Below are positions 6,914 through 18,611 of a stretch of DNA of 64,000 nucleotides, in pieces. The notes beneath the pieces were generated by a model. That model had not been told where the DNA came from. It did no database searches and saw only the letters and a list, made by a program, of their open reading frames with translations. The DNA lies in IMG/VR virus record IMGVR_UViG_3300042514_000542, positions 1 to 64,000 of that record; one strand, given 5' to 3'. The position numbers were made by a program, and so were the translations under genes. Positions within the stretch are counted from its first letter, which is position 1, and the number at the start of each line of letters is the position of its first letter.

Positions 6914-8365
6914 ATGAAAATTCCTCAAAGTATTGACCCAAAGAATGTCAACGCAATCGTTGATAAATGGAAAGACATTTTGGACTACAGCTCGAAAGAT
7001 GTTGCAGAAATCCAAAACGAACACGTTTATCGCACGACTGCTATTCTTATGGAAAACCAAGAGAGATGGTGTTTAGAAGAAGCTGGCACATCTGCTGGTA
7101 TCTTTGGCGCAACGACTGCTGCGGGTTCAGGCCCAGGTGCAATGGTTAATGGCGACAATTATGCTGCTGGAGATTCCCGTCTTCCAAAAATCCTCATTCC
7201 TATGATCAGACGTACTTTCCCCGAATTAATCTCCAATGAGATTTGCGGTGTTCAACCTATGGGTGGACCTGTCGGTTTGGCTTTTGCCCTTCGTTATCAA
7301 TATCAATCTGAGTTTCTCAGCGATGTTGACGGTGTTGGTAAAACTGCTGCTGCTGGCGGAACTTCTCCCGGTTTAGGATATACAGGTAATGCTAATGCTG
7401 TTACCAATGAATTAGGTTATCAATTACTTGATACCCGTTTCACTGGTGTTTCATCTAGTGCGCTATCTGGACATGCTGAATGGTTGTTTGCTAACCAAGA
7501 TCGTGGTGTCGCTCAATTACTTGAGAACTACGAAGCTACTGGACGCATTCCTCAAATTGAGATGAAATTCGAAAAAACCTCTGTTGAGGCTGGGACTCGT
7601 AGATTAGCTACACGTTGGAGTATCGAACTTGAACAAGACATTAAAAATATGCAAGGCATCGACATCGATGGCGAGCTTACTAATGCAATGTCTTACGAAA
7701 TTCAAGCCGAAATCGACCGTGAAGTTGTTATGCGTATGCTTCAAGCCGCATTCAATGCAGGTTTTGGGGCTGGATACTCCTTCTGGAGTCCGGTAAGTGC
7801 TGATGGTCGTTGGACCGCTGAAAGAAATCTTACATTCTATCAAAAACTTATTATCGAAGCTGGTCGTATGGCTGCTCGTAACCGTAGAGGTGCTGCTAAC
7901 TTTGTTATCGCAACTCCGCGTGTATGTAGCATTCTCGAAATGCTTCCTGATTTTAAGGTTTACGAAATCAATGGCACAGTCTCGACTGCTGGTGTTGGTA
8001 TCGCAAAGGTAGGAACCGTTGGATCTCGCTTCACCGTCTATCGTGATACAAGAACTGAAGTTCAGAATACTACTTACTATCCTGCTAACAACTACTACAC
8101 ACCGACTCGTACTGAGCCTGTTGAGTATGCGCTGATGGGTTATAAGGGTTCTGAATATTATGATACTGGTATTATCTATTGCCCATATATCCCGATCATG
8201 GTACAACGTGCTATCGATCCTATTAACTTCACCCCTCGCGTTGGTCTAATGACCCGTTACGGTATCGTTAATAATATTTTTGGTGCTAATCTTTATTACC
8301 ATTTAATTATCGTTAAAGGACTTGGTGTTGCCTTTACACCGGGATCAGTAAGTGTCTATCTGTAA
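6914..8365 (+). CDS. gp23: Major capsid protein (T4 gp23-like)
   Basis: LMENQE, IPMIRRTFPELISNEICGVQPMGGPVGLAFALR, ELEQD, EIDRE, YCPYIP and PRVGLMTRYG motifs. Confidence 0.97.
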   Translation: MKIPQSIDPKNVNAIVDKWKDILDYSSKDVAEIQNEHVYRTTAILMENQERWCLEEAGTSAGIFGATTAAGSGPGAMVNGDNYAAGDSRLPKILIPMIRRTFPELISNEICGVQPMGGPVGLAFALRYQYQSEFLSDVDGVGKTAAAGGTSPGLGYTGNANAVTNELGYQLLDTRFTGVSSSALSGHAEWLFANQDRGVAQLLENYEATGRIPQIEMKFEKTSVEAGTRRLATRWSIELEQDIKNMQGIDIDGELTNAMSYEIQAEIDREVVMRMLQAAFNAGFGAGYSFWSPVSADGRWTAERNLTFYQKLIIEAGRMAARNRRGAANFVIATPRVCSILEMLPDFKVYEINGTVSTAGVGIAKVGTVGSRFTVYRDTRTEVQNTTYYPANNYYTPTRTEPVEYALMGYKGSEYYDTGIIYCPYIPIMVQRAIDPINFTPRVGLMTRYGIVNNIFGANLYYHLIIVKGLGVAFTPGSVSVYL

Positions 8366-8415
8366 TTTATTACAATAGCAGTTACGATTTCTAAGTAAAG
8401 CTGATAAATCAAAAC

Positions 8416-8450
8416 AAAAAGGAGGGGAACCGAAGATCCCCTCCTTTTTT
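8416..8450. terminator. Bidirectional intrinsic terminator
   Basis: AAAAA-GGAGGGGA-accgaaga-TCCCCTCC-TTTTTT between convergent genes. Confidence 0.85.
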
Positions 8451-8467
8451 ACGTACTAAAATATGGA

Positions 8468-10432
8468 CTAAATCTTAATCTCGCCCATATACCCTATACA
8501 TTTTTCAATGTGATTGATAACTTTACCCTGTTCTTCTCTGATATCCAGCAACAATTCACTTTTTTCTATATTTGATGGTTCGCCAGATTCCCTTAATTTT
8601 CGGACCAATTCAAATACATCAGTAATTTTCCACAATCTTTTTGTTTCATTTTTATAGTTCACTAAATCTACATTGAATGTTCTCTTAAACCATTCGTAGA
8701 AAATCTTAAATTTAGCATCTGTATACCTTTCATCCCTCTTGAAATAATATGTGTTGTTATCTCCAGCCATTATAATAAATCTATATATTCTCTCGAATGC
8801 ATTAACTGTAGATCTTAGATCGTAAAACAGACCTCCAATCGCTAAGTTTTCCCACTCCACAACCTTCAGTGGAGTTATAACCTCTAAAGATTGTAAATGT
8901 ATATTTGCACTAGAATTCCAAGTCGTAAAAGAATTAAGAGCCGATTTATATAATTCTAATGCTTCATTAATGTCATTTATTTTTTTAGTATCATATGCTT
9001 GCCAATCATAAGTGGAACATATTTTATATAAATTATATCTTAATACTTTATAGTCTATATTCTGTAACCATGGTAATGAATACTTAATAGTGTCGTATAT
9101 GTAGTCTTCATCTGGTTCATATTTATCTTCATATCCATGAATCTGAATATTCGCATCAATTTCAATCTCAATACCATCACCCAATGAATTAACCGTAACC
9201 CTCGGTGAACCGTCGTTGAAATTTCTACCCATATTACCCTTTAAGTGTGAAAATATTCCATGTGCTACAAGTTTCTCATACTCAGATGGGATATTATCTG
9301 ATGATGAATATATATCGTTTAAATATTCAAAAGGTTTGACTATATCTTTACCGAAATCGATTGTAATTTTCAACTCCACATTTACAACATGTCCATTATT
9401 GGTAGTGTCAAATGTTATTTGATTTCCTAATTCCTTTTCATTGTTTTGATTCAATAGTTCACTAACCACTTCGTCTGTTATTTCACTCCCAGTATTGAAC
9501 TCGAAATCAACTGGAGTATCTCCGTCATTATATAATTTTGGGTTCTTATATACTCTTTCACCACCAGTTAATTTTCTATTTAAATTTATAGACACCCACT
9601 CTTTTATATGCTGGTAAAATTCTGGATAATTAGATCCATATCTAGTTCCTACTGTATAAACCTTCCCTACATCAGAATTATGGGGTTTCATCAAAATCCT
9701 AGATAATGGTTTTTGAAGTTTACATTTAGGTTCCCCATTCGCAATATACATTTCATCTTCTGTTACAACATAAGCGACTAATGTTCCCTCATCAATATCT
9801 TGAGGTATATACTTTTTGTTTATTCCGGCCTTTTGTGCCGTCTTAGGATAATTAATTCGTTCTAGACCTAAATCCATACACGATGTCCAACTCCTGTCCG
9901 TAGATGCTCCAGCAATATCATATGGATGTCTGGAGATGACAATCACAAAATCCCCGTTAGATGATCGTATAGGATCATTTTTGAATTCGTGTAGTAATGG
10001 TTTACCTGTAACTGTTTTAGTTGTCTTTTTACCATCAACTCTGTGGGTGACTTCGATCTCCCCATCTTCTTCAAATTTTTGTAAAAGTTTTCCTATTTTA
10101 AGTGGATTTTTTCTGTCAACTTCTGTAGCGAAAGAAATCTCATCCACTATTTTATATTTATATGCAATACCCTTTATATAATCTTCCATACTATCTATTT
10201 GGTATTTTTTTTGGATTAAAAAATTTTCTATTTTTCTCTTTAATGGACTATCGATATTACTATAATCAATCTTCAAATTTCGAAATATTCTGTTTTTACC
10301 CTTAAAAATTTCATCTAATCTATCATTATATGCCCCAGAATACTTCTTGGATAGCATTTTTTTCTTGGCGTTTTTTAGGGAAATCGCTTCTGCTATAATA
10401 TAATGGTTTAATAATTCCTTGAATGAATCCAT
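8468..10432 (-). CDS. Large late protein with internal-protein-like N-terminus (MDSFKELLNHYIIAE)
   Basis: Start reassigned to ATG 10432, which lies 5 nt after TTAAATA. Contains ISRHPYDIAGAST..SWTSCM motif. Confidence 0.7.
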   Translation of the reverse strand: MDSFKELLNHYIIAEAISLKNAKKKMLSKKYSGAYNDRLDEIFKGKNRIFRNLKIDYSNIDSPLKRKIENFLIQKKYQIDSMEDYIKGIAYKYKIVDEISFATEVDRKNPLKIGKLLQKFEEDGEIEVTHRVDGKKTTKTVTGKPLLHEFKNDPIRSSNGDFVIVISRHPYDIAGASTDRSWTSCMDLGLERINYPKTAQKAGINKKYIPQDIDEGTLVAYVVTEDEMYIANGEPKCKLQKPLSRILMKPHNSDVGKVYTVGTRYGSNYPEFYQHIKEWVSINLNRKLTGGERVYKNPKLYNDGDTPVDFEFNTGSEITDEVVSELLNQNNEKELGNQITFDTTNNGHVVNVELKITIDFGKDIVKPFEYLNDIYSSSDNIPSEYEKLVAHGIFSHLKGNMGRNFNDGSPRVTVNSLGDGIEIEIDANIQIHGYEDKYEPDEDYIYDTIKYSLPWLQNIDYKVLRYNLYKICSTYDWQAYDTKKINDINEALELYKSALNSFTTWNSSANIHLQSLEVITPLKVVEWENLAIGGLFYDLRSTVNAFERIYRFIIMAGDNNTYYFKRDERYTDAKFKIFYEWFKRTFNVDLVNYKNETKRLWKITDVFELVRKLRESGEPSNIEKSELLLDIREEQGKVINHIEKCIGYMGEIKI

Positions 10433-11570: not shown

Positions 11571-12317
11571 GTGTTTGTTAGAGGAAGCGGAAGTGGTAAT
11601 GAGTATCGTAGAGTTGATAACTCTTTTTATCGAGGAATTGTGGTCAAGAATAATGACCCAGCCAAACTTAATAGAGTTAAGGTATATATCCCAGAACTCA
11701 CTAATCAACCATATGATGACTGGTTTGAGAAATTTGAAACTTTTATATTAAAGTCACCGGGAACTAATTCTAATCCGAAAACAGAAAGTGAGAAAAAAAC
11801 CAATGGTGATTGGGAAGATACTAAACTATTTGAAGAAGTTTGTAAAGGTATTCCATGGGCTGAACAATGTTCACCCCTAGTAGGTGAATCTGGAAGTTTT
11901 CGATATTATAAGGATGGTGAAATATCAACCATCTCCGATTGTAATTACGTGGATGGATTTGAAGTTATAAACAAAGAATCACCAACCATAGATATCGGAT
12001 CGTTTTCCCCTGCATATTTATATGAAAATATAGCAACTACACTTGGAGATGCCTTCTCAAATCCTATCGGTAACTTTTCAGTTAAATGTAATCCATATTC
12101 CTTCTCATATAGACCTTCAAACCATGTCAATAAATCCAAAGGATTATTTGGTGTTCCTGAAGTTGGGTCTAAGGTTTGGGTATTTCACTATGAGGGTGAT
12201 CTAAACTTTCCCATTTATTTTGGTGTTTATAGGGATTATAGAGAGATGTCTATGATTAATAATACGGACAATGAAGAAATGATTAGTTCTAAGTATCCAT
12301 TAGATTTCGATAACTAA
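11571..12317 (+). CDS. Baseplate hub gp5-like N-terminal OB-fold protein
   Basis: FYRGIVVKNNDPAKLNRVKVYIP ... GVPEVGSKVWVF...GD.NFPIYFG is the gp5/VgrG OB signature, here with a large insertion. Confidence 0.8.
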   Translation: MFVRGSGSGNEYRRVDNSFYRGIVVKNNDPAKLNRVKVYIPELTNQPYDDWFEKFETFILKSPGTNSNPKTESEKKTNGDWEDTKLFEEVCKGIPWAEQCSPLVGESGSFRYYKDGEISTISDCNYVDGFEVINKESPTIDIGSFSPAYLYENIATTLGDAFSNPIGNFSVKCNPYSFSYRPSNHVNKSKGLFGVPEVGSKVWVFHYEGDLNFPIYFGVYRDYREMSMINNTDNEEMISSKYPLDFDN

Positions 12318-12332
12318 TACTTAAATATTTTA

Positions 12333-14018
12333 ATGGGATTAGTATATAAAAATCGACTTATAATTAGCCAAAGAGGTGGTGGTCTGGATATAGACAACAC
12401 AACCGAACAGGAAAAGGTTAAATTATCACATAGAAGTGGATCTAGTATTAACATAACGAATGTTGTAACTTCGGAGTTAGCAACCAATAATAAACAGACA
12501 AATGTTGTCCACGACTTATTTGAAACTGTGGGTAACGATAAAACTACATTCACTGGTGGTGATGTAAGTGAAAGAGTTGTAGGTAATTCTTTTTCTATAA
12601 GAGGAGTGGCATCACAGGCAGAATTAGATGCCTATAAATTATGGAAAGATACTTATTCTGAAGTAGCCAAACTTAACAGTGAATTTAAAATAAAGCGTGG
12701 TGGTTCGGGATATCCCAATGGTAATGATACCGACTTATCGGGAACCAGAGATGACAATCCAGTAATAGGATCTAAGACATATACGGTGGAGAATAAATTC
12801 TCTGGATATACCGGTATACCTCTACGAAATAAAGATGTTGATCAAGTTGTTGATTATACAACAGTTCCAGATAAGGGTAAAACTAAACCAGCAGAAGAGA
12901 GAACGATTAAAGAAAGAGATATTAATCAATCCGCTGGAAGTAGCGGATCTAATGCACCCGGTGTATTAGAATTTGGTGCATCGAAGTCTGCCGCAACCGA
13001 AAATGGTGATTGGGCTGATAACGATCCAGCTAAGAAAATTAACGAAGCTATATTAGCTATTCAAGATAAGCTTTTAGCTATTGAACAAAAAATGGGCTTG
13101 GGTGATGACGTATCTTATGTGAAAAGAAATAAGATAGAACAAGTTGGTGCAGAATTTAATGATTATCCATCTATAAGAATTGACGAAAAAGGTAGAAGTC
13201 AACCATTTGAAATGTTGGTATCCGAAACCGGAACATATAAAAATCATGATTATATCCCCCATGTGGAGGAAGTAGATAATTCATCTAACTTCCCATGTGG
13301 TAATGATGATGCAGTTATAGGTAATAAATTTTCCAGAACTGTTGGTAGTGGTGGTATAGGTTTAAAGACTACAGGACCAATGGAACTTGGTGGAACTACT
13401 CTAAAGGCTGGATTTAAAAAGATTAACATTAACTCATCTCATGGTATTCAAATAGCGTCTGAGAATTCTTTAGAATTACAATCATTAAAGACAATTACCC
13501 TAAGAACTAATAGACAGGTGTATGTGGAATCCTCCCTTGGGGTTAAGGGTAATGTTATTGTTGGGGGTGGTTTAAGTGTTGAAGGGGAGACTTATCTACA
13601 ACACGTTACAGCACCACTTGAGGTTCAGCAAACGCAGGATACGATCATTATGGGTAAATTTGCAGCAGATGAAAATCGTAAGTTAGTTATAGGAGAAGCT
13701 AATGTAGGGGGTGCTTGGTATCCCGTGTATGCTAATAAGACGGATAATCTTATTGTGAATTACCCACATAGTCACCACTTCAATAATATACCTTTGAGAT
13801 TAACTAAATCGAATAAGGATGTTCGCAATATGGCTGCATCCGAAAAGATCAATACGCATAATAACGTATCCCAAGCGTTGCCACAGTTACATGAGAGGAA
13901 GACCCCGAAGAATGATGAGTCAGCGGCGAAAGATAGCATTTTGTCTACCATAAATGGAGAAAGTTCAGTAGTATCATACAAACTTTCTAATGGACTTACG
14001 ATTAACATATATAAATAA
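12333..14018 (+). CDS. Baseplate spike, gp5 C-terminal beta-helix-like protein
   Basis: DNT.EQEKVKLSHRSGS, ETVGNDKTTFTGGDVSERVVGN beta-helix repeats and an HSHH motif; follows the OB-domain gene. Confidence 0.7.
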   Translation: MGLVYKNRLIISQRGGGLDIDNTTEQEKVKLSHRSGSSINITNVVTSELATNNKQTNVVHDLFETVGNDKTTFTGGDVSERVVGNSFSIRGVASQAELDAYKLWKDTYSEVAKLNSEFKIKRGGSGYPNGNDTDLSGTRDDNPVIGSKTYTVENKFSGYTGIPLRNKDVDQVVDYTTVPDKGKTKPAEERTIKERDINQSAGSSGSNAPGVLEFGASKSAATENGDWADNDPAKKINEAILAIQDKLLAIEQKMGLGDDVSYVKRNKIEQVGAEFNDYPSIRIDEKGRSQPFEMLVSETGTYKNHDYIPHVEEVDNSSNFPCGNDDAVIGNKFSRTVGSGGIGLKTTGPMELGGTTLKAGFKKININSSHGIQIASENSLELQSLKTITLRTNRQVYVESSLGVKGNVIVGGGLSVEGETYLQHVTAPLEVQQTQDTIIMGKFAADENRKLVIGEANVGGAWYPVYANKTDNLIVNYPHSHHFNNIPLRLTKSNKDVRNMAASEKINTHNNVSQALPQLHERKTPKNDESAAKDSILSTINGESSVVSYKLSNGLTINIYK

Positions 14019-14028
14019 TATCATAACA

Positions 14029-15087
14029 ATGAATAGTGAAAATATCGAAATTCCAGCACCAGAGAAGCCATATATGGTTCTACCAAAAGGGTTGAGACTC
14101 CCACCACCTGAAAATATCATATTGGAGAACTCCCGTATAGTGAGCATTGCTGGTTGGTCTGATGAGGAAATTACCAATGTGATCTTAGAATACGAAAAAT
14201 ATAACAAGGCTGATGATACTAATACTAATACTGATACTGTTGCGAGAGAGTTGGTTTTACATTACGTAAGATCAAAACGACCAATAACCTACACACTTTT
14301 GGAGGGACTTAAGATTTACATAAATGACTATAAAGAAAGTATAACGCTTTTAAACAGTGTTGGTAAACTGATTCAAGCACCACCAGGATTATACATGACA
14401 CTACCCGCTGGGTTGAAACTCCCACAATCACCAGAATACCTCACCTCCGATGCTTTTGCCATCGAAGGCAAGAAATGGTCAGAGGAGTTCGAAAACGGTT
14501 TTATCACATTGGTATCTACCCGTTGGATGAACATTGATGGTTGGTCTGATGAGGAAATTGCCGATGTGATCTTAGAATACGAAAAATATAATCGTGGTGT
14601 TAAATGGGCTGAGAAGGTTGCTGAGGCTGCTGCTGAGGCTGCTGCTGAGGCTGCTGAGAAGGTTGCTGCTGAGGCTGCTGAGAAGGTTGCTGCTGAGAAG
14701 GTTGCTGCGAGAGATAAGATGTTGCCTTTCGTAAGAGGAAAACGACCACTATTGTACAAACTGTCTGGTGGGCTTAAGATTTACATAGATGACTCGTATG
14801 AAGGTCAAATGATGACCAACCATTTCGATGACCTGGTTCCAATGCCGTTGGGGCCATATATGATACTACCCAAAGGGTTGAGACTCCTACCACCGCCCGG
14901 AACATATCAAAAGAAAAGCCAATACGATGATTACTTTCCAGAAGTTATGGCTAGTGGATTAATAATTGAGACATTCCTCGATCCAAGCGGTTATTGGATA
15001 CTGGAGAAACCCCGTGTAGTATTCATTAATGGTTGGTCTGATGAGAAACTTGCTGATACACTCGTAGAACACGAAAAACATAATTAA
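14029..15087 (+). CDS. Hypothetical protein with three internal repeats and an Ala/Glu tract
   Basis: Repeats of PYMxLPKGLRLPPP...GWSDEEIxxVILEYEKYN. Confidence 0.7.
   Translation: MNSENIEIPAPEKPYMVLPKGLRLPPPENIILENSRIVSIAGWSDEEITNVILEYEKYNKADDTNTNTDTVARELVLHYVRSKRPITYTLLEGLKIYINDYKESITLLNSVGKLIQAPPGLYMTLPAGLKLPQSPEYLTSDAFAIEGKKWSEEFENGFITLVSTRWMNIDGWSDEEIADVILEYEKYNRGVKWAEKVAEAAAEAAAEAAEKVAAEAAEKVAAEKVAARDKMLPFVRGKRPLLYKLSGGLKIYIDDSYEGQMMTNHFDDLVPMPLGPYMILPKGLRLLPPPGTYQKKSQYDDYFPEVMASGLIIETFLDPSGYWILEKPRVVFINGWSDEKLADTLVEHEKHN
14608..14709 (+). repeat. GCTGCTGAG / GAGAAGGTT minisatellite encoding an (AEKVA/AAE)n linker
   Basis: Tandem 9-nt units read directly from the sequence. Confidence 0.85.
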
Positions 15088-15247
15088 AGGACTTACATCC
15101 TGCTCTATGATGTTGTATTCTATGTCGAATAATCCAACCACTAATCTCTTCAACGTTGTGACGTTTGGGTATCTACCGAAAATATCAACACCCACAATAA
15201 TATCTCTCAAGCGTTGCCACAAACGCATGAGAGAAAATTGGCAACTA

Positions 15248-15886
15248 TCAAAGAATCTGATCAATAATTCCATATTCAAGACATTCTTGAGCCGTGAGAT
15301 ATATATCTCGTTTCATAAGTTCATCTAATCTCTTCATTGGGATTTTAGTATATTCTTTGTAGATGTTCTTCAAACACTTCATCAGTGCTGTGGCACTTTC
15401 CATAGCGTCTTCCATCTCAGAAAACTTACCATACATATCACCAGATAGTTGATGTATGAGTAGTGTCGCATGTCTACCCATAAATCTTTTATGTCCTGCA
15501 ATAGTTATAAGTGTTCCAGCAGATGCTACACAGCCATCGACATATGTATAAATTTTGGATTTTAGACTGGATAGTTTATCTAGTGTTGATAACGCTGAAT
15601 ATATCTCACCACCATTTGTTTTTATATGTAGATGGATGATTGGTGTGAATGAATCACCCAAAACATTCTTAGTATTTTGTAACTTTAGATCAACCTCCAA
15701 TAGTAGTTTATTAAGCTCTAAAATAGATCCATCATTAACATCTTCATAGAAGAAGATATTATTTTCAACTAATTTTAAGGATGATCCCCCATCCGTGTTA
15801 ATCATTATAGTTTGTGGGTCGTCCATAGTGTCCATAGACATTCTTTGTTTATTTGTTTGTTTCCAATTCATAATATTATCCTTCAC
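15248..15886 (-). CDS. clpP: ClpP-family protease subunit
   Basis: IKTNGG, DGCVASAGTLI (catalytic Ser), LLIHQ (His), RDIYLTAQECLEYGIIDQI. Confidence 0.85.
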   Translation of the reverse strand: MKDNIMNWKQTNKQRMSMDTMDDPQTIMINTDGGSSLKLVENNIFFYEDVNDGSILELNKLLLEVDLKLQNTKNVLGDSFTPIIHLHIKTNGGEIYSALSTLDKLSSLKSKIYTYVDGCVASAGTLITIAGHKRFMGRHATLLIHQLSGDMYGKFSEMEDAMESATALMKCLKNIYKEYTKIPMKRLDELMKRDIYLTAQECLEYGIIDQIL

Positions 15887-17603
15887 ATGATTTACATGTC
15901 ATAATTGACCTAGCCAACATTTGTGATGGGTTGGTGCTTCTCTGATAATAGAGACTCTTAATTCCTTGCTCCCAAGCAAAGATCATAAGCTCATTAACAT
16001 CCTTTGGTTTGATATCTGGTGGTATCATTAGATTTATAGATTGCCCTTGGTCGATGAACTTCTGTCTTTGTGCTGCTTGAATTATAATTTCCTTTTGAGG
16101 AATCTCTCCAAAAGTTTTAAACACATCCTTTTCATCTTGAGTTAGGAAATCTAAATGTTGGACAGAACCTCCATGAATTAGGATGTCTTTCCAAACTGCT
16201 TGTGTATTTTGCCCCTTAGTTTCTAGGAATGATACCAAATATGGATTCTTGAAAGTGAATTTACCCTTAGCCAAATCCTTGGTAAAGTAATTACTATTCA
16301 ATGGTTCGATACTTGGAGATACTTGACCTAGAATGAATGAGCTACTTGTAGTGGGTGCAACTGCCATAGTTGTGACATTCCTTCTACCATAACCCTGTAA
16401 TAAAGGTGGTTCTCCGAATTCAGAGGATAATTTAGAAGTGGCTGAATCACTTTTATTCTTAATAAAACTCCAAACTTCAGTATTTAGAAACTTAGCATCC
16501 ATCGATTCGAATGCAATCATTTTAGATTGTAGTAAAGAATGCCATCCCAAAATTCCAATACCTAATGCTCTCTGATTGAATGCGAAGGCTCTAGGTGCTT
16601 CCATGAAGGGCTTCCCTTCAGTTTTAGTAATGAATTCTGACATTACTGCATCTAGAAAATAAACAAGTGTTTCAACTGCATCCGTTTCTTTCCACTCGTC
16701 CCAAGTTTCCAAGTTCACAGACGAAAGATCGCACACAAAGGATTCTTCATTTGAATTAGATAACATAATCTCAGAACATAAGTTTGAGTTATGAATTGTT
16801 AATCCCTTATCCTTATAAACTTGTGGTGCTTGATTATTAGCATTATCTGAGAAGAAGATATATGGATATCCAGTTTCAAAACGCTTCTTAATAACTAGAC
16901 CCCAAATCTTACGTGCGTGTTTATCCCCATCAATCATGGATTTCATCCATTCATCAGATACACAAACACCGATGGACATGTTTTGAATCGAATGTCCATC
17001 TGATTTAATTTTTAGAAATTCCTCAATATCTGGATGATCGATTGGTAGATATCCAGCGAATGAACCTCTACGAACATTCCCTTGAGAAACGATATCCATC
17101 ATCTTCTCATAAAGTTCCATGAAGTGAACCGCACCAGTTGAAGTGCCACCAGTAGAGATTTCAGAGCCTCTACCACGTAATTTCCCAAAGTATGCACTGG
17201 TTCCACCACCATACTTTGTCATCATAGAGACTTCGGCTAATTTATAGCCTGTAATAGCCTCCAGAGTATCATCTACATAACTTCCGAAGCAACTGATAGG
17301 TAGACCCCTATCCCTTCCAAAATTGCTCCATATGGGGCTAGAAAGGGAGTAATACCCCCTCTTCATATATCCGACGAATTTATTAGAAAAATTTCTAATA
17401 TGTTCAGGATATGTTAAATCGTCCCACTCATCCCATTTTGATGTTGGAACTAAATTCTTCTCCCAATACGCAATCTTTAGATATTTCTCTGCTGCTTTTG
17501 CAATATCTTTTATTCTACCCTCTGCGGTTTCACCCTCTAATAAATACCCACGTTCTAGGAATTTCCTAGAGTCCTTGTTTAACCAATAATAGTCTTCTCT
17601 CAT
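15876..17603 (-). CDS. nrdA: Ribonucleotide reductase class I alpha subunit (short, no ATP cone)
   Basis: PISCF, SQGNVRRGS, NSNLCSEI, VCDLSS, AVAPTTSSS, DQGQSIN and C-terminal CKSCEG. Confidence 0.95.
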   Translation of the reverse strand: MREDYYWLNKDSRKFLERGYLLEGETAEGRIKDIAKAAEKYLKIAYWEKNLVPTSKWDEWDDLTYPEHIRNFSNKFVGYMKRGYYSLSSPIWSNFGRDRGLPISCFGSYVDDTLEAITGYKLAEVSMMTKYGGGTSAYFGKLRGRGSEISTGGTSTGAVHFMELYEKMMDIVSQGNVRRGSFAGYLPIDHPDIEEFLKIKSDGHSIQNMSIGVCVSDEWMKSMIDGDKHARKIWGLVIKKRFETGYPYIFFSDNANNQAPQVYKDKGLTIHNSNLCSEIMLSNSNEESFVCDLSSVNLETWDEWKETDAVETLVYFLDAVMSEFITKTEGKPFMEAPRAFAFNQRALGIGILGWHSLLQSKMIAFESMDAKFLNTEVWSFIKNKSDSATSKLSSEFGEPPLLQGYGRRNVTTMAVAPTTSSSFILGQVSPSIEPLNSNYFTKDLAKGKFTFKNPYLVSFLETKGQNTQAVWKDILIHGGSVQHLDFLTQDEKDVFKTFGEIPQKEIIIQAAQRQKFIDQGQSINLMIPPDIKPKDVNELMIFAWEQGIKSLYYQRSTNPSQMLARSIMTCKSCEG

Positions 17604-17609
17604 AATAAT

Positions 17610-18611
17610 TTAAAATAAATCTTCCTCACCGAATGATTGGTTTTTCTTCGAATATTCCGTGGGTCTACCATGGAAAAAATCAACCATATTGTTTCCCAAC
17701 AATTCTTCATCGAACCATTCTGTCGGACTAAGAAGATCATAGTCTATCTCGAATACTTTGTCAAGTCCTATTTGGGTTAACGATTCGTTGATTCTATTTT
17801 TAATGAATTCCTTCAAGATTGGAGCAGACAGTCCGGGTTCATTAATACCATTAACCATCCAATCTACGATTTTACTTTCGGATTCAAAAGCTTGTTCAGC
17901 TTCATGTGCGATTCTCCCCAAAAGTTCTTGATCAAAAAGTTCTGGATATTCTTCTCTAATTGTATTAATAAGTTTAATTCCAACTAGTGCATGAATGTTT
18001 TCTTCGTTTCTAGTATACTTTACTTGTTGATCGGTATCTTTTAATACATTCTTCTCACGGGCAAACCAATTAATAATATAAAATTGTGAAAATAACGATA
18101 CGTTTTCTACAAATAGTGTGAATAGTATAAGCGCATACAAGTATTGTTTCTTAGAATCCTTGTAAAATTTATGTGTATACTTTCTAAGATACTTAACTCT
18201 ACCTTGAATCCATTCAAGTTTTAGATTCTCCTCAAAAATATCCTCAATATCCAATACTGATAGAAGACGTTCATATGCATTGTTGTGAATAACTTCAACA
18301 TTCGCCATAACATAACCAAGGTCCTGTAAAGATGGGTGTGGTAAATTCTCGCCAAGTTTAGCCCAAAAGGTTTTCACTGCGACTTCAATCTGTCCAATTG
18401 CGGATAGTGTTCGAATTATGATTTCTTTTTCTTGTTCTGTTAGAACAGTTTTAAATTGGTGTAGATCGGATTTGAATGAGAACTCCTTATCCGTCCAGAA
18501 GCCATTATGCATTGCTTCTATAAATGTCTCAGTCCATGGATATCTGTTTGGTTTGCGGCTAATCTGTTCATCGAAAAGTTTGAGTTGTGCTGGTGCTGGT
18601 TCAATTATCAT
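17610..18611 (-). CDS. nrdB: Ribonucleotide reductase class I beta subunit
   Basis: FW...E, EVIHNNAY, VENVSLFSQF, EENIH and DFF..RPTEYSK motifs. Confidence 0.95.
   Translation of the reverse strand: MIIEPAPAQLKLFDEQISRKPNRYPWTETFIEAMHNGFWTDKEFSFKSDLHQFKTVLTEQEKEIIIRTLSAIGQIEVAVKTFWAKLGENLPHPSLQDLGYVMANVEVIHNNAYERLLSVLDIEDIFEENLKLEWIQGRVKYLRKYTHKFYKDSKKQYLYALILFTLFVENVSLFSQFYIINWFAREKNVLKDTDQQVKYTRNEENIHALVGIKLINTIREEYPELFDQELLGRIAHEAEQAFESESKIVDWMVNGINEPGLSAPILKEFIKNRINESLTQIGLDKVFEIDYDLLSPTEWFDEELLGNNMVDFFHGRPTEYSKKNQSFGEEDLF

What the first reader, a model, noticed from the sequence alone, without database searches (positions are those of the whole stretch)
13841..15267. Spike gene with a duplicated C-terminus bracketing an inserted repeat protein, separated from it by a 2-nt slip
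Seen: 13841-13901 (EKINTHNNVSQALPQLHERK) recurs at 15177-15237 as a start-less orphan (ENINTHNNISQALPQTHERKLATIKESDQ*). The present spike tail (KDSILSTINGESSVVSYKLSNGLTINIY) resembles the repeat unit of the next ORF (RDKMLPFVRGKRPLLYKLSGGLKIYI). Adding one TA to the ATATATA run near 14007-14013 would fuse the two frames (…INIYINNIITM…). Inference: a 1.3-kb module inserted into the spike 3' end gives alternative spike tips: short, fused (like evolved VgrG), or reverted by recombination between the two copies. The same run also forms a TATAAATA late promoter.
Basis: partly seen in the sequence, partly recalled or inferred. Interest (0 to 1): 0.6.

Follow-up and report, generated by a model that had tools for sequence, protein, structure and literature searches.

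The report
Removable accessory cassette in phage spike gene
A lake phage carries a 1.3-kb, laterally exchanged gene cassette in the end of its tail-spike gene; recombination between two short repeats removes it cleanly, both versions occur in nature, and the cassette probably hangs an extra, fast-evolving protein on the spike tip.

Summary
Spike codons 504-523 (13842-13901) recur at 15178-15237 (46/60 nt, 17/20 aa). The last 38 spike residues are the first half (A) of the A-B unit repeated in the next ORF.

Insertion and reversion are supported:
- About 116 of 120 listed homologues are 510-540 aa and end like the orphan, next to the convergent ClpP-like gene.
- A cassette-less allele joined inside the shared 14-nt core (13872-13885 / 15208-15221) occurs in three independent assemblies with near-identical flanks. 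Its 532-aa product is letter for letter spike 1-513 plus the orphan tail.

Synonymous divergence between the window and a second cassette-bearing lineage falls from 0.77 in the spike body to 0.26 in the cassette, so the cassette was exchanged laterally. dN/dS there is about 1, yet the ORF stays open.

The slip-fusion idea is not supported. The tract is (AT)3 in every assembly, and the two lineages need opposite steps (+TA, -AT). TATAAATA is not a promoter motif used in this genome.

Likely function: the spike tail (half A) and the ORF2 N-terminus (half B) complete one domain and dock ORF2 on the spike. Support is weak (ipSAE 0.52, best control 0.02). Two other lineages carry different spike tails with different extra genes at the same site.

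The parts
11571..12317 (+). gp5-type OB-fold baseplate hub/spike N-terminal protein (248 aa). Its stop overlaps the spike start (TAATG).
   Evidence: Pfam PF04717 Phage_base_V, E 3.7e-11; phrog_430.
12333..14018 (+). Central spike gene (561 aa), cassette-bearing allele. Body is residues 1-503.
   Evidence: Gene order gp13-like / OB-fold / spike is shared by relatives. Atlas leads point to Gp5_C, Gp5_trimer_C and Apex clusters. Pfam Gp5_trimer_C hits at residues 50-85 are below threshold. The family has 344 or more members.
13767..13775 (+). HSH (HxH) motif, residues 479-481, within YPHSHH.
   Evidence: Present in every homologue whose C-terminal sequence was printed. HxH marks Apex-type spikes (10.1101/2023.02.25.529910). 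No PAAR gene (PF05488) in the genome.
13842..13901 (+). Copy A of the repeated terminal segment (EKINTHNNVSQALPQLHERK), expressed in the cassette-bearing allele.
   Evidence: Codons 1-10 resemble those of other strains of the window's lineage. From the core onward the sequence belongs to the cassette.
13872..13885 (+). 14-nt core CAAGCGTTGCCACA, identical in both copies. Left crossover site.
13902..14015 (+). Cassette-encoded 38-aa spike tail, half-unit A1 (TPKNDESAAKDSILSTINGESSVVSYKLSNGLTINIYK). Stop at 14016-14018.
   Evidence: Aligns with six other A half-units. DNA repeat family D3.
14007..14013 (+). ATATATA tract in the spike/ORF2 overlap. TATAAATA lies at 14010-14017.
   Evidence: Unchanged in Logan contigs X1 rec3, X2 rec13 and X4 rec26. 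+TA fuses the frames and -TA gives an immediate stop.
14029..15087 (+). ORF2 (352 aa). An upstream in-frame ATG at 13990 overlaps the spike end. Layout: B1 about 14029-14205; A2 14230-14331; B2 14329-14598; Ala/Glu-rich linker 14599-14710; A3 14692-14799; B3 14797-15084.
   Evidence: Repeat families D2-D4. Only close homologues are 119-239 aa proteins (a 266-aa version is read from contig L019) of one other phage lineage. The A3-B3 unit folds as one domain, pLDDT 76, pTM 0.68.
15088..15177 (+). Non-coding spacer, 3' end of the cassette. It is 90% identical to the spacer of the second lineage.
   Evidence: Not homologous to the spike and no other copy in the genome. No Rfam match.
15178..15267 (+). 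Copy B, the silent native spike terminus (ENINTHNNISQALPQTHERKLATIKESDQ*). Its core is at 15208-15221. Its last 20 nt overlap the convergent ClpP-like gene.
   Evidence: Collinear with the spike ends of module-less relatives. It is the expressed terminus in the cassette-less allele.
15248..15886 (-). Convergent ClpP-like protease gene, the right-hand neighbour of the native spike end.
   Evidence: Pfam PF00574, E 1.4e-29.

Best explanation
The window is the first 64 kb of a 206.6-kb T4-like freshwater phage. Its central-spike gene carries an accessory cassette of about 1.3 kb, running from the 14-nt core inside copy A (13872) to the end of the spacer (15177).

The cassette replaces the native 9-residue tail (LATIKESDQ) with a 38-residue tail (half-unit A1). 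It also adds a separate gene, ORF2, with the layout B1-A2-B2-linker-A3-B3. The native terminus remains downstream as a silent copy in the same register.

Shown:
- The cassette shares a far more recent ancestor with the cassette of a second phage lineage than the two backbones do, so it has been exchanged laterally.
- It evolves with dN/dS near 1 while its reading frame is kept open.
- Cassette-bearing and cassette-less alleles with near-identical flanks coexist in lakes. The cassette-less allele is the exact product of a crossover in the 14-nt core.

Inferred:
- Homologous recombination at the core deletes the cassette. Recombination with a cassette-bearing phage can restore it. This is a population-level polymorphism rather than a programmed switch.
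- The silent copy keeps its coding sense because it is repeatedly replaced by, or expressed as, functional termini of cassette-less strains.
- A1 on the spike and B1 at the ORF2 N-terminus complete one A-B domain by fragment complementation. This would tether up to three ORF2 molecules to the trimeric spike's C-terminal end as a fast-evolving, host-facing or injected accessory.
For: Insertion:
- 116 of 120 listed spike homologues are 510-540 aa. Close relatives (87-91% identity) end EKINTHNN[VI]SQALPQIHERKLATIKESGQ*, like the orphan.
- In L002, L004, L007, L022, L024 and L025 the spike abuts the ClpP-like gene directly.

Two alleles:
- Run X3, contig record 19 (4,906 nt), skips 1,336 nt between 13871 and 15208. 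Fourteen letters fit both sides, both flanks have 0 mismatches, and the run has no depth over the cassette apart from the low-complexity Ala/Glu-linker bin (14599-14719), where contigs of unrelated organisms also lie.
- P0131 (532 aa) equals the predicted hybrid at all 532 residues. It lies on JGI contig L022 (13.2 kb) and ENA contig L023 (11.2 kb). Their right flanks are 99.8% identical to the window over 4.26 kb.
- The cassette-bearing form is seen at 100% identity in runs X1, X2 and X4.

Lateral exchange:
- Window versus L008, pS is 0.77 in the spike body, 0.80 in the OB-fold gene and 0.73 in nrdA. It is 0.26 pooled over the cassette (Fisher p = 6e-25). The drop lies at about 13820-13870.
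- The spacer is 90% identical between the lineages.
- Copy B of the window versus copy B of L008 gives pS 0.96, the backbone level.

Selection:
- Cassette pN is 0.28 against pS 0.26.
- A 352-codon ORF stays open with P of about 0.001-0.006 under 10-13% random substitution.

Docking:
- Linkers lie between B(n) and A(n+1), so the unit is A then B.
- The unit A3-B3 is predicted as a single domain.
- Complex prediction of tail A1 with B1 gave ipSAE 0.52, best control 0.02, verdict 'weak support'. The tool's calibration: the mark was reached by 58 of 80 solved complexes and 2 of 110 mismatched pairs, but scores of 0.60 or under came from only 7 of those solved complexes and from both mismatches. 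The runs agree in at least 98% of contacts and the partner pLDDT is at least 73.
- Two more lineages with extended spikes have different tails and different extra + strand genes at the same site: L028, 567 aa plus a 355-aa ORF; L029, 563 aa plus a 327-aa ORF. Extended tail and extra gene co-occur in 4 of 4 lineages against 0 of 7 with short spikes.
Against: - The cassette is found in only two lineages, and they share it by recent descent. Conservation of the split arrangement is therefore not independent evidence of function.
- dN/dS near 1 is also what relaxed constraint gives.
- The complex prediction is only a weak pass and used my own shallow alignments. No contacts were returned.
- No fold or family match gives ORF2 a function.
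- The silent copy in L021 has 4 private amino-acid changes and no private synonymous change, so it decays while silent.
- All three cassette-less assemblies share one junction, so they may descend from a single event. The data do not say which allele is ancestral.
- Copy A carries lineage-specific amino acids on a cassette-like synonymous background. I can explain this only by patchy recombination.
- No expression or virion data exist.
Confidence: 0.62

Rival explanations
1. The cassette is a passenger ('moron') gene whose insertion by chance fused half a repeat unit to the spike. The 38-aa tail is a tolerated appendage, ORF2 acts elsewhere (for example inside the infected cell), and there is no physical link to the spike.
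For: dN/dS is about 1 in the tail and in B1. ORF2 has its own ATG 10 nt after the spike stop. No fold or family match was found. The complex prediction is only a weak pass.
Against: Extended spike tails and extra downstream genes co-occur in four lineages with three unrelated cassettes, against none of seven short-spike lineages. The tail keeps the residues that are invariant in all A half-units. The controls in the complex prediction scored 0.00-0.02.
Confidence: 0.25
2. Spike and ORF2 are joined into one 918-residue protein in part of the population or of the translation events. The join would come from slippage on the ATATATA run at the DNA, RNA or ribosome level, giving a covalently extended spike.
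For: One added TA gives an open 918-codon frame whose junction restores a complete A-B unit. The run lies in the 26-nt overlap of the two frames.
Against: The tract has only three AT units. It is identical in the window and in contigs of three runs. Its counterpart in the second lineage is identical in six or more contigs from at least two studies. The relative frame is +1 in the window and -1 in the second lineage, so the two need opposite steps. There is no X XXY YYZ heptamer and no prfB-like +1 context. Both lineages keep a stop right after ...IY(K) and an ATG 8-10 nt later.
Confidence: 0.06
3. The cassette-less form is an assembly artefact caused by the repeat, and the orphan is only a decaying relic of a fixed, old insertion.
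For: The repeat exists. Copy B in L021 shows decay. Contigs break in the repetitive linker.
Against: The shared core is 14 nt, shorter than the 31-letter words of the Logan index. On my own understanding that such contigs join only across shared words of about that length, 14 nt should not cause a false join; I did not test this. Run X3 has no depth over the cassette apart from the low-complexity linker bin. Two other assemblies made by other pipelines (JGI, ENA) give the same junction on 11-13 kb contigs.
Confidence: 0.04

Closest known systems
T6SS VgrG spikes whose C-terminal tails specify the cargo effector encoded just downstream, and 'evolved' VgrGs with fused effector domains (review PMC5471719; tail specificity from my own knowledge)
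   Same: A trimeric gp5/VgrG-type spike has a variable C-terminal extension paired with a cognate downstream gene. Different tails go with different downstream genes at the same locus. The cargo modules are exchanged laterally.
   Different: This is a phage virion spike, not a secretion system. The extra protein is not fused, so it is not an 'evolved' spike. The proposed link is completion of a split domain, not an adaptor, PAAR or TTR domain. No effector activity is known. The spike has an HxH apex motif and the genome has no PAAR gene.
Alternative tips of the P22/Sf6 tail needle gp26, with or without a C-terminal knob (PMC3741392)
   Same: Closely related phages differ by presence or absence of a C-terminal module on the central, membrane-contacting needle or spike.
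   Different: There the knob is part of the same polypeptide and belongs to a podovirus needle. No flanking repeats, silent alternative terminus or second gene is described.
Apex-type central spikes, P2 gpV and phi92 gp138 (10.1101/2023.02.25.529910)
   Same: [quoted passage not shown] No PAAR protein.
   Different: The OB-fold is a separate 248-aa protein here. About 45 residues follow HxH even in the short allele, against 12 in gpV. Iron binding was not tested.
Deletions between short direct repeats and cassette swapping at conserved motifs in T-even phages, such as tail-fibre adhesin exchange at His-box motifs (my own knowledge, not checked in the paper library)
   Same: Recombination at very short conserved stretches removes or swaps host-interaction modules between diverged phages.
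   Different: Here the two repeats encode the same peptide in register, so the deletion restores a complete native spike terminus.

Membership tests
gp5/gpV-type central spike (Apex type) | OB-fold domain (PF04717) that seats the spike on the tube/hub | tested here: met
   Present, but in the separate upstream 248-aa protein (11571-12317), E 3.7e-11. It is not in the 561-aa chain itself.
gp5/gpV-type central spike (Apex type) | Triple-stranded beta-helix (Gp5_C / Gp5_trimer_C repeats) | tested here: inconclusive
   Only sub-threshold Pfam hits at residues 50-85 in 3 of 5 homologues, E 0.02-0.9. Atlas leads point to Gp5_C clusters. No PDB sequence match.
gp5/gpV-type central spike (Apex type) | [quoted passage not shown] | tested here: met
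   HSH at residues 479-481 is present in every homologue whose C-terminal sequence was printed. There is no PF05488 match in the 206.6-kb genome.
gp5/gpV-type central spike (Apex type) | Trimer with a bound Fe ion at the tip; location in the baseplate | not testable with these tools
   Needs a structure or virion proteomics.
'Evolved' spike with a covalently fused C-terminal effector | Effector domain in the same reading frame as the spike | tested here: not met
   A stop follows the 38-aa tail. ORF2 is a separate ORF in the window, in three runs and in six or more contigs of the second lineage.
Spike-tail-specified, non-covalent cargo loading (VgrG-like) | Tail sequence co-varies with the downstream gene | tested here: met
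   Three unrelated tail/gene pairs in four lineages. None of seven short-spike lineages has a + strand gene there.
Spike-tail-specified, non-covalent cargo loading (VgrG-like) | Physical binding of the tail to the cargo | tested here: inconclusive
   Complex prediction gave ipSAE 0.52 against a best control of 0.02, verdict 'weak support'. There is no experiment.
Programmed ribosomal frameshift | Slippery site and a conserved frame relation between the two ORFs | tested here: not met
   No canonical heptamer. The relation is +1 in the window and -1 in the L008 lineage.
Simple-sequence-repeat phase switch | Long repeat tract with length polymorphism among copies | tested here: not met
   The tract has three AT units and the same length in all assemblies. 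Rare variants are not visible in contigs.
Diversity-generating retroelement (template and variable repeat) | Differences confined to template adenines; a reverse transcriptase nearby | tested here: not met
   Differences between the copies involve all four bases on either copy. The neighbours are ClpP-like, nrdA and nrdB genes.
Self-splicing intron with an internal ORF | Group I or group II ribozyme core | tested here: not met
   No Rfam match with E below 1 in 13500-15500. The predicted spacer hairpin has no compensatory changes.
T4-type late promoter | TATAAATA enriched and placed upstream of late genes | tested here: not met
   31 copies against a median of 45 for its permutations; 6 lie upstream of ORFs.

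The most novel reading that the evidence does not exclude
The spike tail and the ORF2 N-terminus are the two halves of one domain. Fragment complementation would be a plug-and-socket system that loads a rapidly diversifying accessory protein on the tip of a phage central spike. Such tail-plus-gene cassettes would be swapped between diverged phages at a short conserved core in the spike's last codons, with the native terminus kept downstream as a built-in way back. This would be a phage counterpart of VgrG-tail-directed effector loading.
Probability: 0.35. Interest if true: 0.75.

Novelty: new variant of a known kind. Interest (0 to 1): 0.58.

Why it matters
Little is known about what phage central spikes carry at their tips beyond PAAR or apex domains. 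Here natural populations hold two otherwise near-identical phages that differ only by a spike-tip cassette. That makes a ready-made pair for asking what such an accessory does, whether in host range, envelope penetration or defence evasion.

The locus also shows how a host-interaction module can move between phages whose backbones are only about 67% identical. It moves through a 14-nt conserved core and can be lost without damaging an essential virion gene. If the split-domain docking is real, it is a compact way of attaching cargo to a contractile-tail spike and could be tested directly by co-expression.

Tried and rejected
- Phage GenBank collection: no DNA match.
- IMG/VR: ORF2 peptides found nothing. 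An 18-nt spacer pattern gave only chance hits, L011-L013. A 24-nt B1 pattern gave nothing.
- Metagenome scan: only the L008 lineage carries the cassette.
- Whole-library HMM search with the A-B unit: two true hits. P0006-P0009 are unrelated repeat proteins.
- Fold searches: full ORF2 model, no match. Single unit, best Z 4.9 and TM below 0.4. Weak type III secretion chaperone rows at Z 2.2-3.1 are below noise.
- Atlas feature search for ORF2: nothing.
- Intron, riboswitch or small RNA in the cassette: no Rfam hit.
- Spacer hairpin: no covariation, and two pairs are broken in the window. The spacer's 90% conservation is what the cassette's neutral divergence predicts.
- Spacer as a relic of upstream spike sequence: alignment no better than shuffled sequence.
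- Second copy of the cassette in the genome: none.
- Diversity-generating retroelement: rejected on the mismatch pattern.
- Terminator after ORF2: none found.
- Spike tree: the window, L003 and the L008 group form an unresolved polytomy, so gains and losses cannot be counted.
- Purifying selection on the silent copy within cassette-bearing genomes: weakened by the decay seen in L021.
Full report
**Context.** The window is the first 64 kb of a 206,590-bp IMG/VR virus record, rated complete, with 35% G+C. Runs that hold it are lake-water metagenomes.

The local gene order, with strand in brackets, is:
- a 672-aa ORF (-)
- small ORFs
- an OB-fold baseplate protein, 11571-12317 (PF04717, E 3.7e-11)
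- a 561-aa ORF, 12333-14018
- ORF2, 14029-15087
- a convergent ClpP-like gene, 15248-15886 (-)
- nrdA and nrdB

Relatives add gp13-like and gp23 genes nearby, so this is a T4-like myovirus.

Calling the 561-aa protein the spike is reasonable but rests on indirect evidence:
- It directly follows the OB-fold gene, with a TAATG stop/start overlap.
- It gives sub-threshold Gp5_trimer_C and Gp5_C hits and Atlas leads to Gp5_C and Apex clusters.
- Its YPHSHH motif (HSH at residues 479-481) is present in every homologue whose C-terminal sequence was printed.
- The genome has no PAAR gene. By the rule in 10.1101/2023.02.25.529910, this points to an apex-type spike.

**The observation.**
- Copy A (13842-13901) and copy B (15178-15237) share 46 of 60 nt and 17 of 20 residues.
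- Eleven of the 14 differences are at third codon positions (pS 0.87, pN 0.09).
- Copy B has no start codon. It runs on to LATIKESDQ and a stop, and its last 20 nt overlap the end of the ClpP-like gene.

The repeat unit of ORF2 has two halves.
- Half A reads R..IL..V.G.RP..YKLSGGLKIYI.
- Half B reads YM.LPKGLRLPPP...GWSDE....EYEKYN.
- ORF2 is B1-A2-B2-(Ala/Glu linker)-A3-B3.
- The last 38 spike residues are an A half (A1).
- The spacing from GL to YM is 79 nt in the split first unit and 87 nt in the other two. This 8-nt deficit is why the frames differ.

**The orphan is the native terminus.**
- Of the 120 best spike homologues, 116 are 510-540 aa.
- Those closest to the window (87-91% identity) end EKINTHNN[VI]SQALPQIHERKLATIKESGQ*.
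- Wherever I looked, the short spike converges directly on the ClpP-like gene.
- The window's copy B is collinear with that arrangement.

**Both alleles exist.**
- Run X3, from a different study, has a 4,906-nt contig that matches 13196-13871 and then 15208-15900 without a mismatch. Fourteen letters fit both sides. The run has no depth over the cassette, apart from the low-complexity linker bin (14599-14719) where contigs of unrelated organisms also lie.
- The 90%-identity cluster that holds the window's spike also holds P0131 (532 aa). P0131 is letter for letter spike 1-513 plus the tail of copy B.
- P0131 lies on a 13.2-kb JGI contig and an 11.2-kb ENA contig. Their junction is copy A left, the core CAAGCGTTGCCACA, then copy B right. 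Their right flanks are 99.8% identical to the window over 4.26 kb.
- The cassette-bearing form is seen at 100% identity in runs X1 (possibly the source sample), X2 and X4.
- I cannot say which allele came first. All three cassette-less assemblies share one junction and may descend from one event.

**A second cassette-bearing lineage.** The only relatives of ORF2 in 5.8 and 1.8 billion proteins are 119-239 aa proteins of one other freshwater phage group; a 266-aa version is read from contig L019 (L008-L010, L014-L021). That group has the same architecture:
- a 562-565 aa spike ending ...GLTIDIY*
- an ATG 8 nt later
- ORF2 laid out as B1-linker-A-B
- a 90%-identical spacer
- a silent copy of its own terminal segment

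The Ala-rich linker differs in length between near-identical contigs.

**Lateral exchange and selection.**
- Synonymous divergence between the window and L008 is saturated in the backbone: spike body 0.77, OB-fold gene 0.80, nrdA 0.73.
- It drops at about 13820-13870 to 0.0-0.4 and stays low to the end of ORF2. Pooled over the cassette it is 0.26 (Fisher p = 6e-25).
- The non-coding spacer, at 10% divergence, fits the same neutral level, so its conservation needs no function.
- The B copies of the two lineages differ at backbone level (pS 0.96).
- So the block from the core of copy A to the end of the spacer is a unit with a much younger common ancestor than the genomes that carry it.
- Within it pN (0.28) equals pS. 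Yet a 352-codon ORF would survive that much random change with P of about 0.001-0.006, and the motif residues are invariant across all units.
- I read this as a maintained gene under diversifying or strongly relaxed selection.

**The silent copy.**
- The differences between A and B are overwhelmingly synonymous in both lineages.
- Copy B in L021 nevertheless has four private amino-acid changes and no private synonymous change.
- In the window's lineage, the left parts of A and of B are each as close to other strains' termini (25-27 of 30 nt) as those strains are to one another.
- The simplest reading is that A-left and B come from functional termini of different strains of the same lineage. 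They would have been brought together, and be kept fresh, by recombination between cassette-bearing and cassette-less genomes.
- One pattern stays unexplained. Copy A shares synonymous codons with copy A of the other lineage, but shares amino acids with copy B of its own genome.

**Slip fusion and promoter.**
- Adding TA fuses the frames in the window. In the other lineage one AT must be removed, and adding one gives a stop.
- The relative frame is therefore not conserved. There is no slippery heptamer. The tract has three units and is identical in every assembly.
- Both lineages keep the stop just after ...IY(K) and an ATG 8-10 nt later. This argues that two separate proteins are the working state. 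Contigs cannot exclude rare variants.
- TATAAATA is not enriched and rarely precedes genes. The motif that does precede many genes is TTGACA...TTAATTAAAACCGAAnTATAAT, followed by ATG a few bases later.

**How it may work.**
- Linkers lie between B(n) and A(n+1), so the structural unit is A followed by B.
- AlphaFold2 folds A3-B3 alone as one helix/sheet/helix domain (pLDDT 76, pTM 0.68). The model of full-length ORF2 is mediocre (pLDDT 62).
- The first unit is split between the spike (A1) and ORF2 (B1).
- Complex prediction on the 38-aa tail and the 62-aa B1 gave ipSAE 0.52 in three runs against 0.00-0.02 for three controls. The tool rates this 'weak support'.
- Independent support comes from comparison. 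The only other extended spikes among the 120 homologues are L028 (marine, 567 aa) and L029 (563 aa). They carry different tails and different extra genes (355 and 327 aa) at the same site, without a silent copy.
- Extended tail and extra + strand gene co-occur in 4 of 4 lineages and in none of 7 short-spike lineages.
- None of these extra proteins has a family or fold match. Their activity is unknown.

**Verdict.** The sequence observation is confirmed. The insertion and the recombinational reversion are supported by direct evidence. The slip fusion and the late promoter are not supported.

The locus is a laterally exchanged, cleanly removable spike-tip cassette. Its kind is known: spike/VgrG cargo modules and phage mosaicism. 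Three details are new:
- a split-domain link
- a silent in-register native terminus
- both alleles in nature

No alternative genetic code was used.

Noticed in passing
whole genome G000; examples printed: A strongly repeated promoter-like block, TTGACA-(T)TTAATTAAAACCGAAnTATAAT, is followed by ATG only 5-8 nt after the -10 hexamer. TAATTAAA occurs 102 times, 55 of them within 40 nt upstream of an ORF start. This suggests many early genes with very short or no leaders.
   Followed up: partly
window 14599-14719; L008, L014, L016, L019, L021: The Ala-rich linker of ORF2 varies in length between near-identical contigs (ORF2 204, 227, 239 and 266 aa). It breaks assemblies: Logan contigs end there, L021 has a run of N, and contigs of unrelated organisms pile up there.
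   Followed up: partly
L028:3001-5784 and L029:3001-5681: Two other phage lineages, one from a TARA marine sample, have spikes with unrelated 35-40 aa C-terminal extensions. Each has an extra 327-355 aa ORF between the spike and the next gene. The two ORFs are weakly alike (E 1e-4) and have no family match.
   Followed up: partly
L003:6605-7468 (-): In this short-spike relative, a 287-aa minus-strand ORF sits between the spike and the ClpP-like gene. The spike/ClpP junction therefore takes insertions of other kinds too. I did not check its identity.
   Followed up: no
window 15248-18611 versus L008:5708-9083: Gene order differs. The ClpP-like gene lies between the spike and nrdA in the window but beyond nrdB in the L008 lineage, so that lineage's silent spike terminus abuts nrdA.
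   Followed up: no
window 11571-14018: The gp5-like spike is split. The OB-fold domain is a separate 248-aa protein whose stop overlaps the start of the 561-aa body (TAATG). There is no lysozyme domain in either. This holds in all relatives seen.
   Followed up: partly
window about 8344-9339 versus L022/L023: The cassette-less contigs are 97-99.8% identical to the window on both sides but do not align by megablast over about 1 kb inside the 672-aa minus-strand ORF. This is another mosaic patch between near-identical strains.
   Followed up: no
L008:5560-5600; window 15123-15162: The spacer of the L008 lineage holds a perfect 10-bp inverted repeat (ACGTTGAATA / TATTCAACGT) around a 15-17 nt loop. 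Two of its pairs are broken in the window.
   Followed up: partly
run X1, contig record 4 (15,033 nt), laid on 13187-15534: The probable source sample also holds a diverged relative that matches only in patches and skips the cassette region. Related cassette-less phages therefore co-occur with this one.
   Followed up: no
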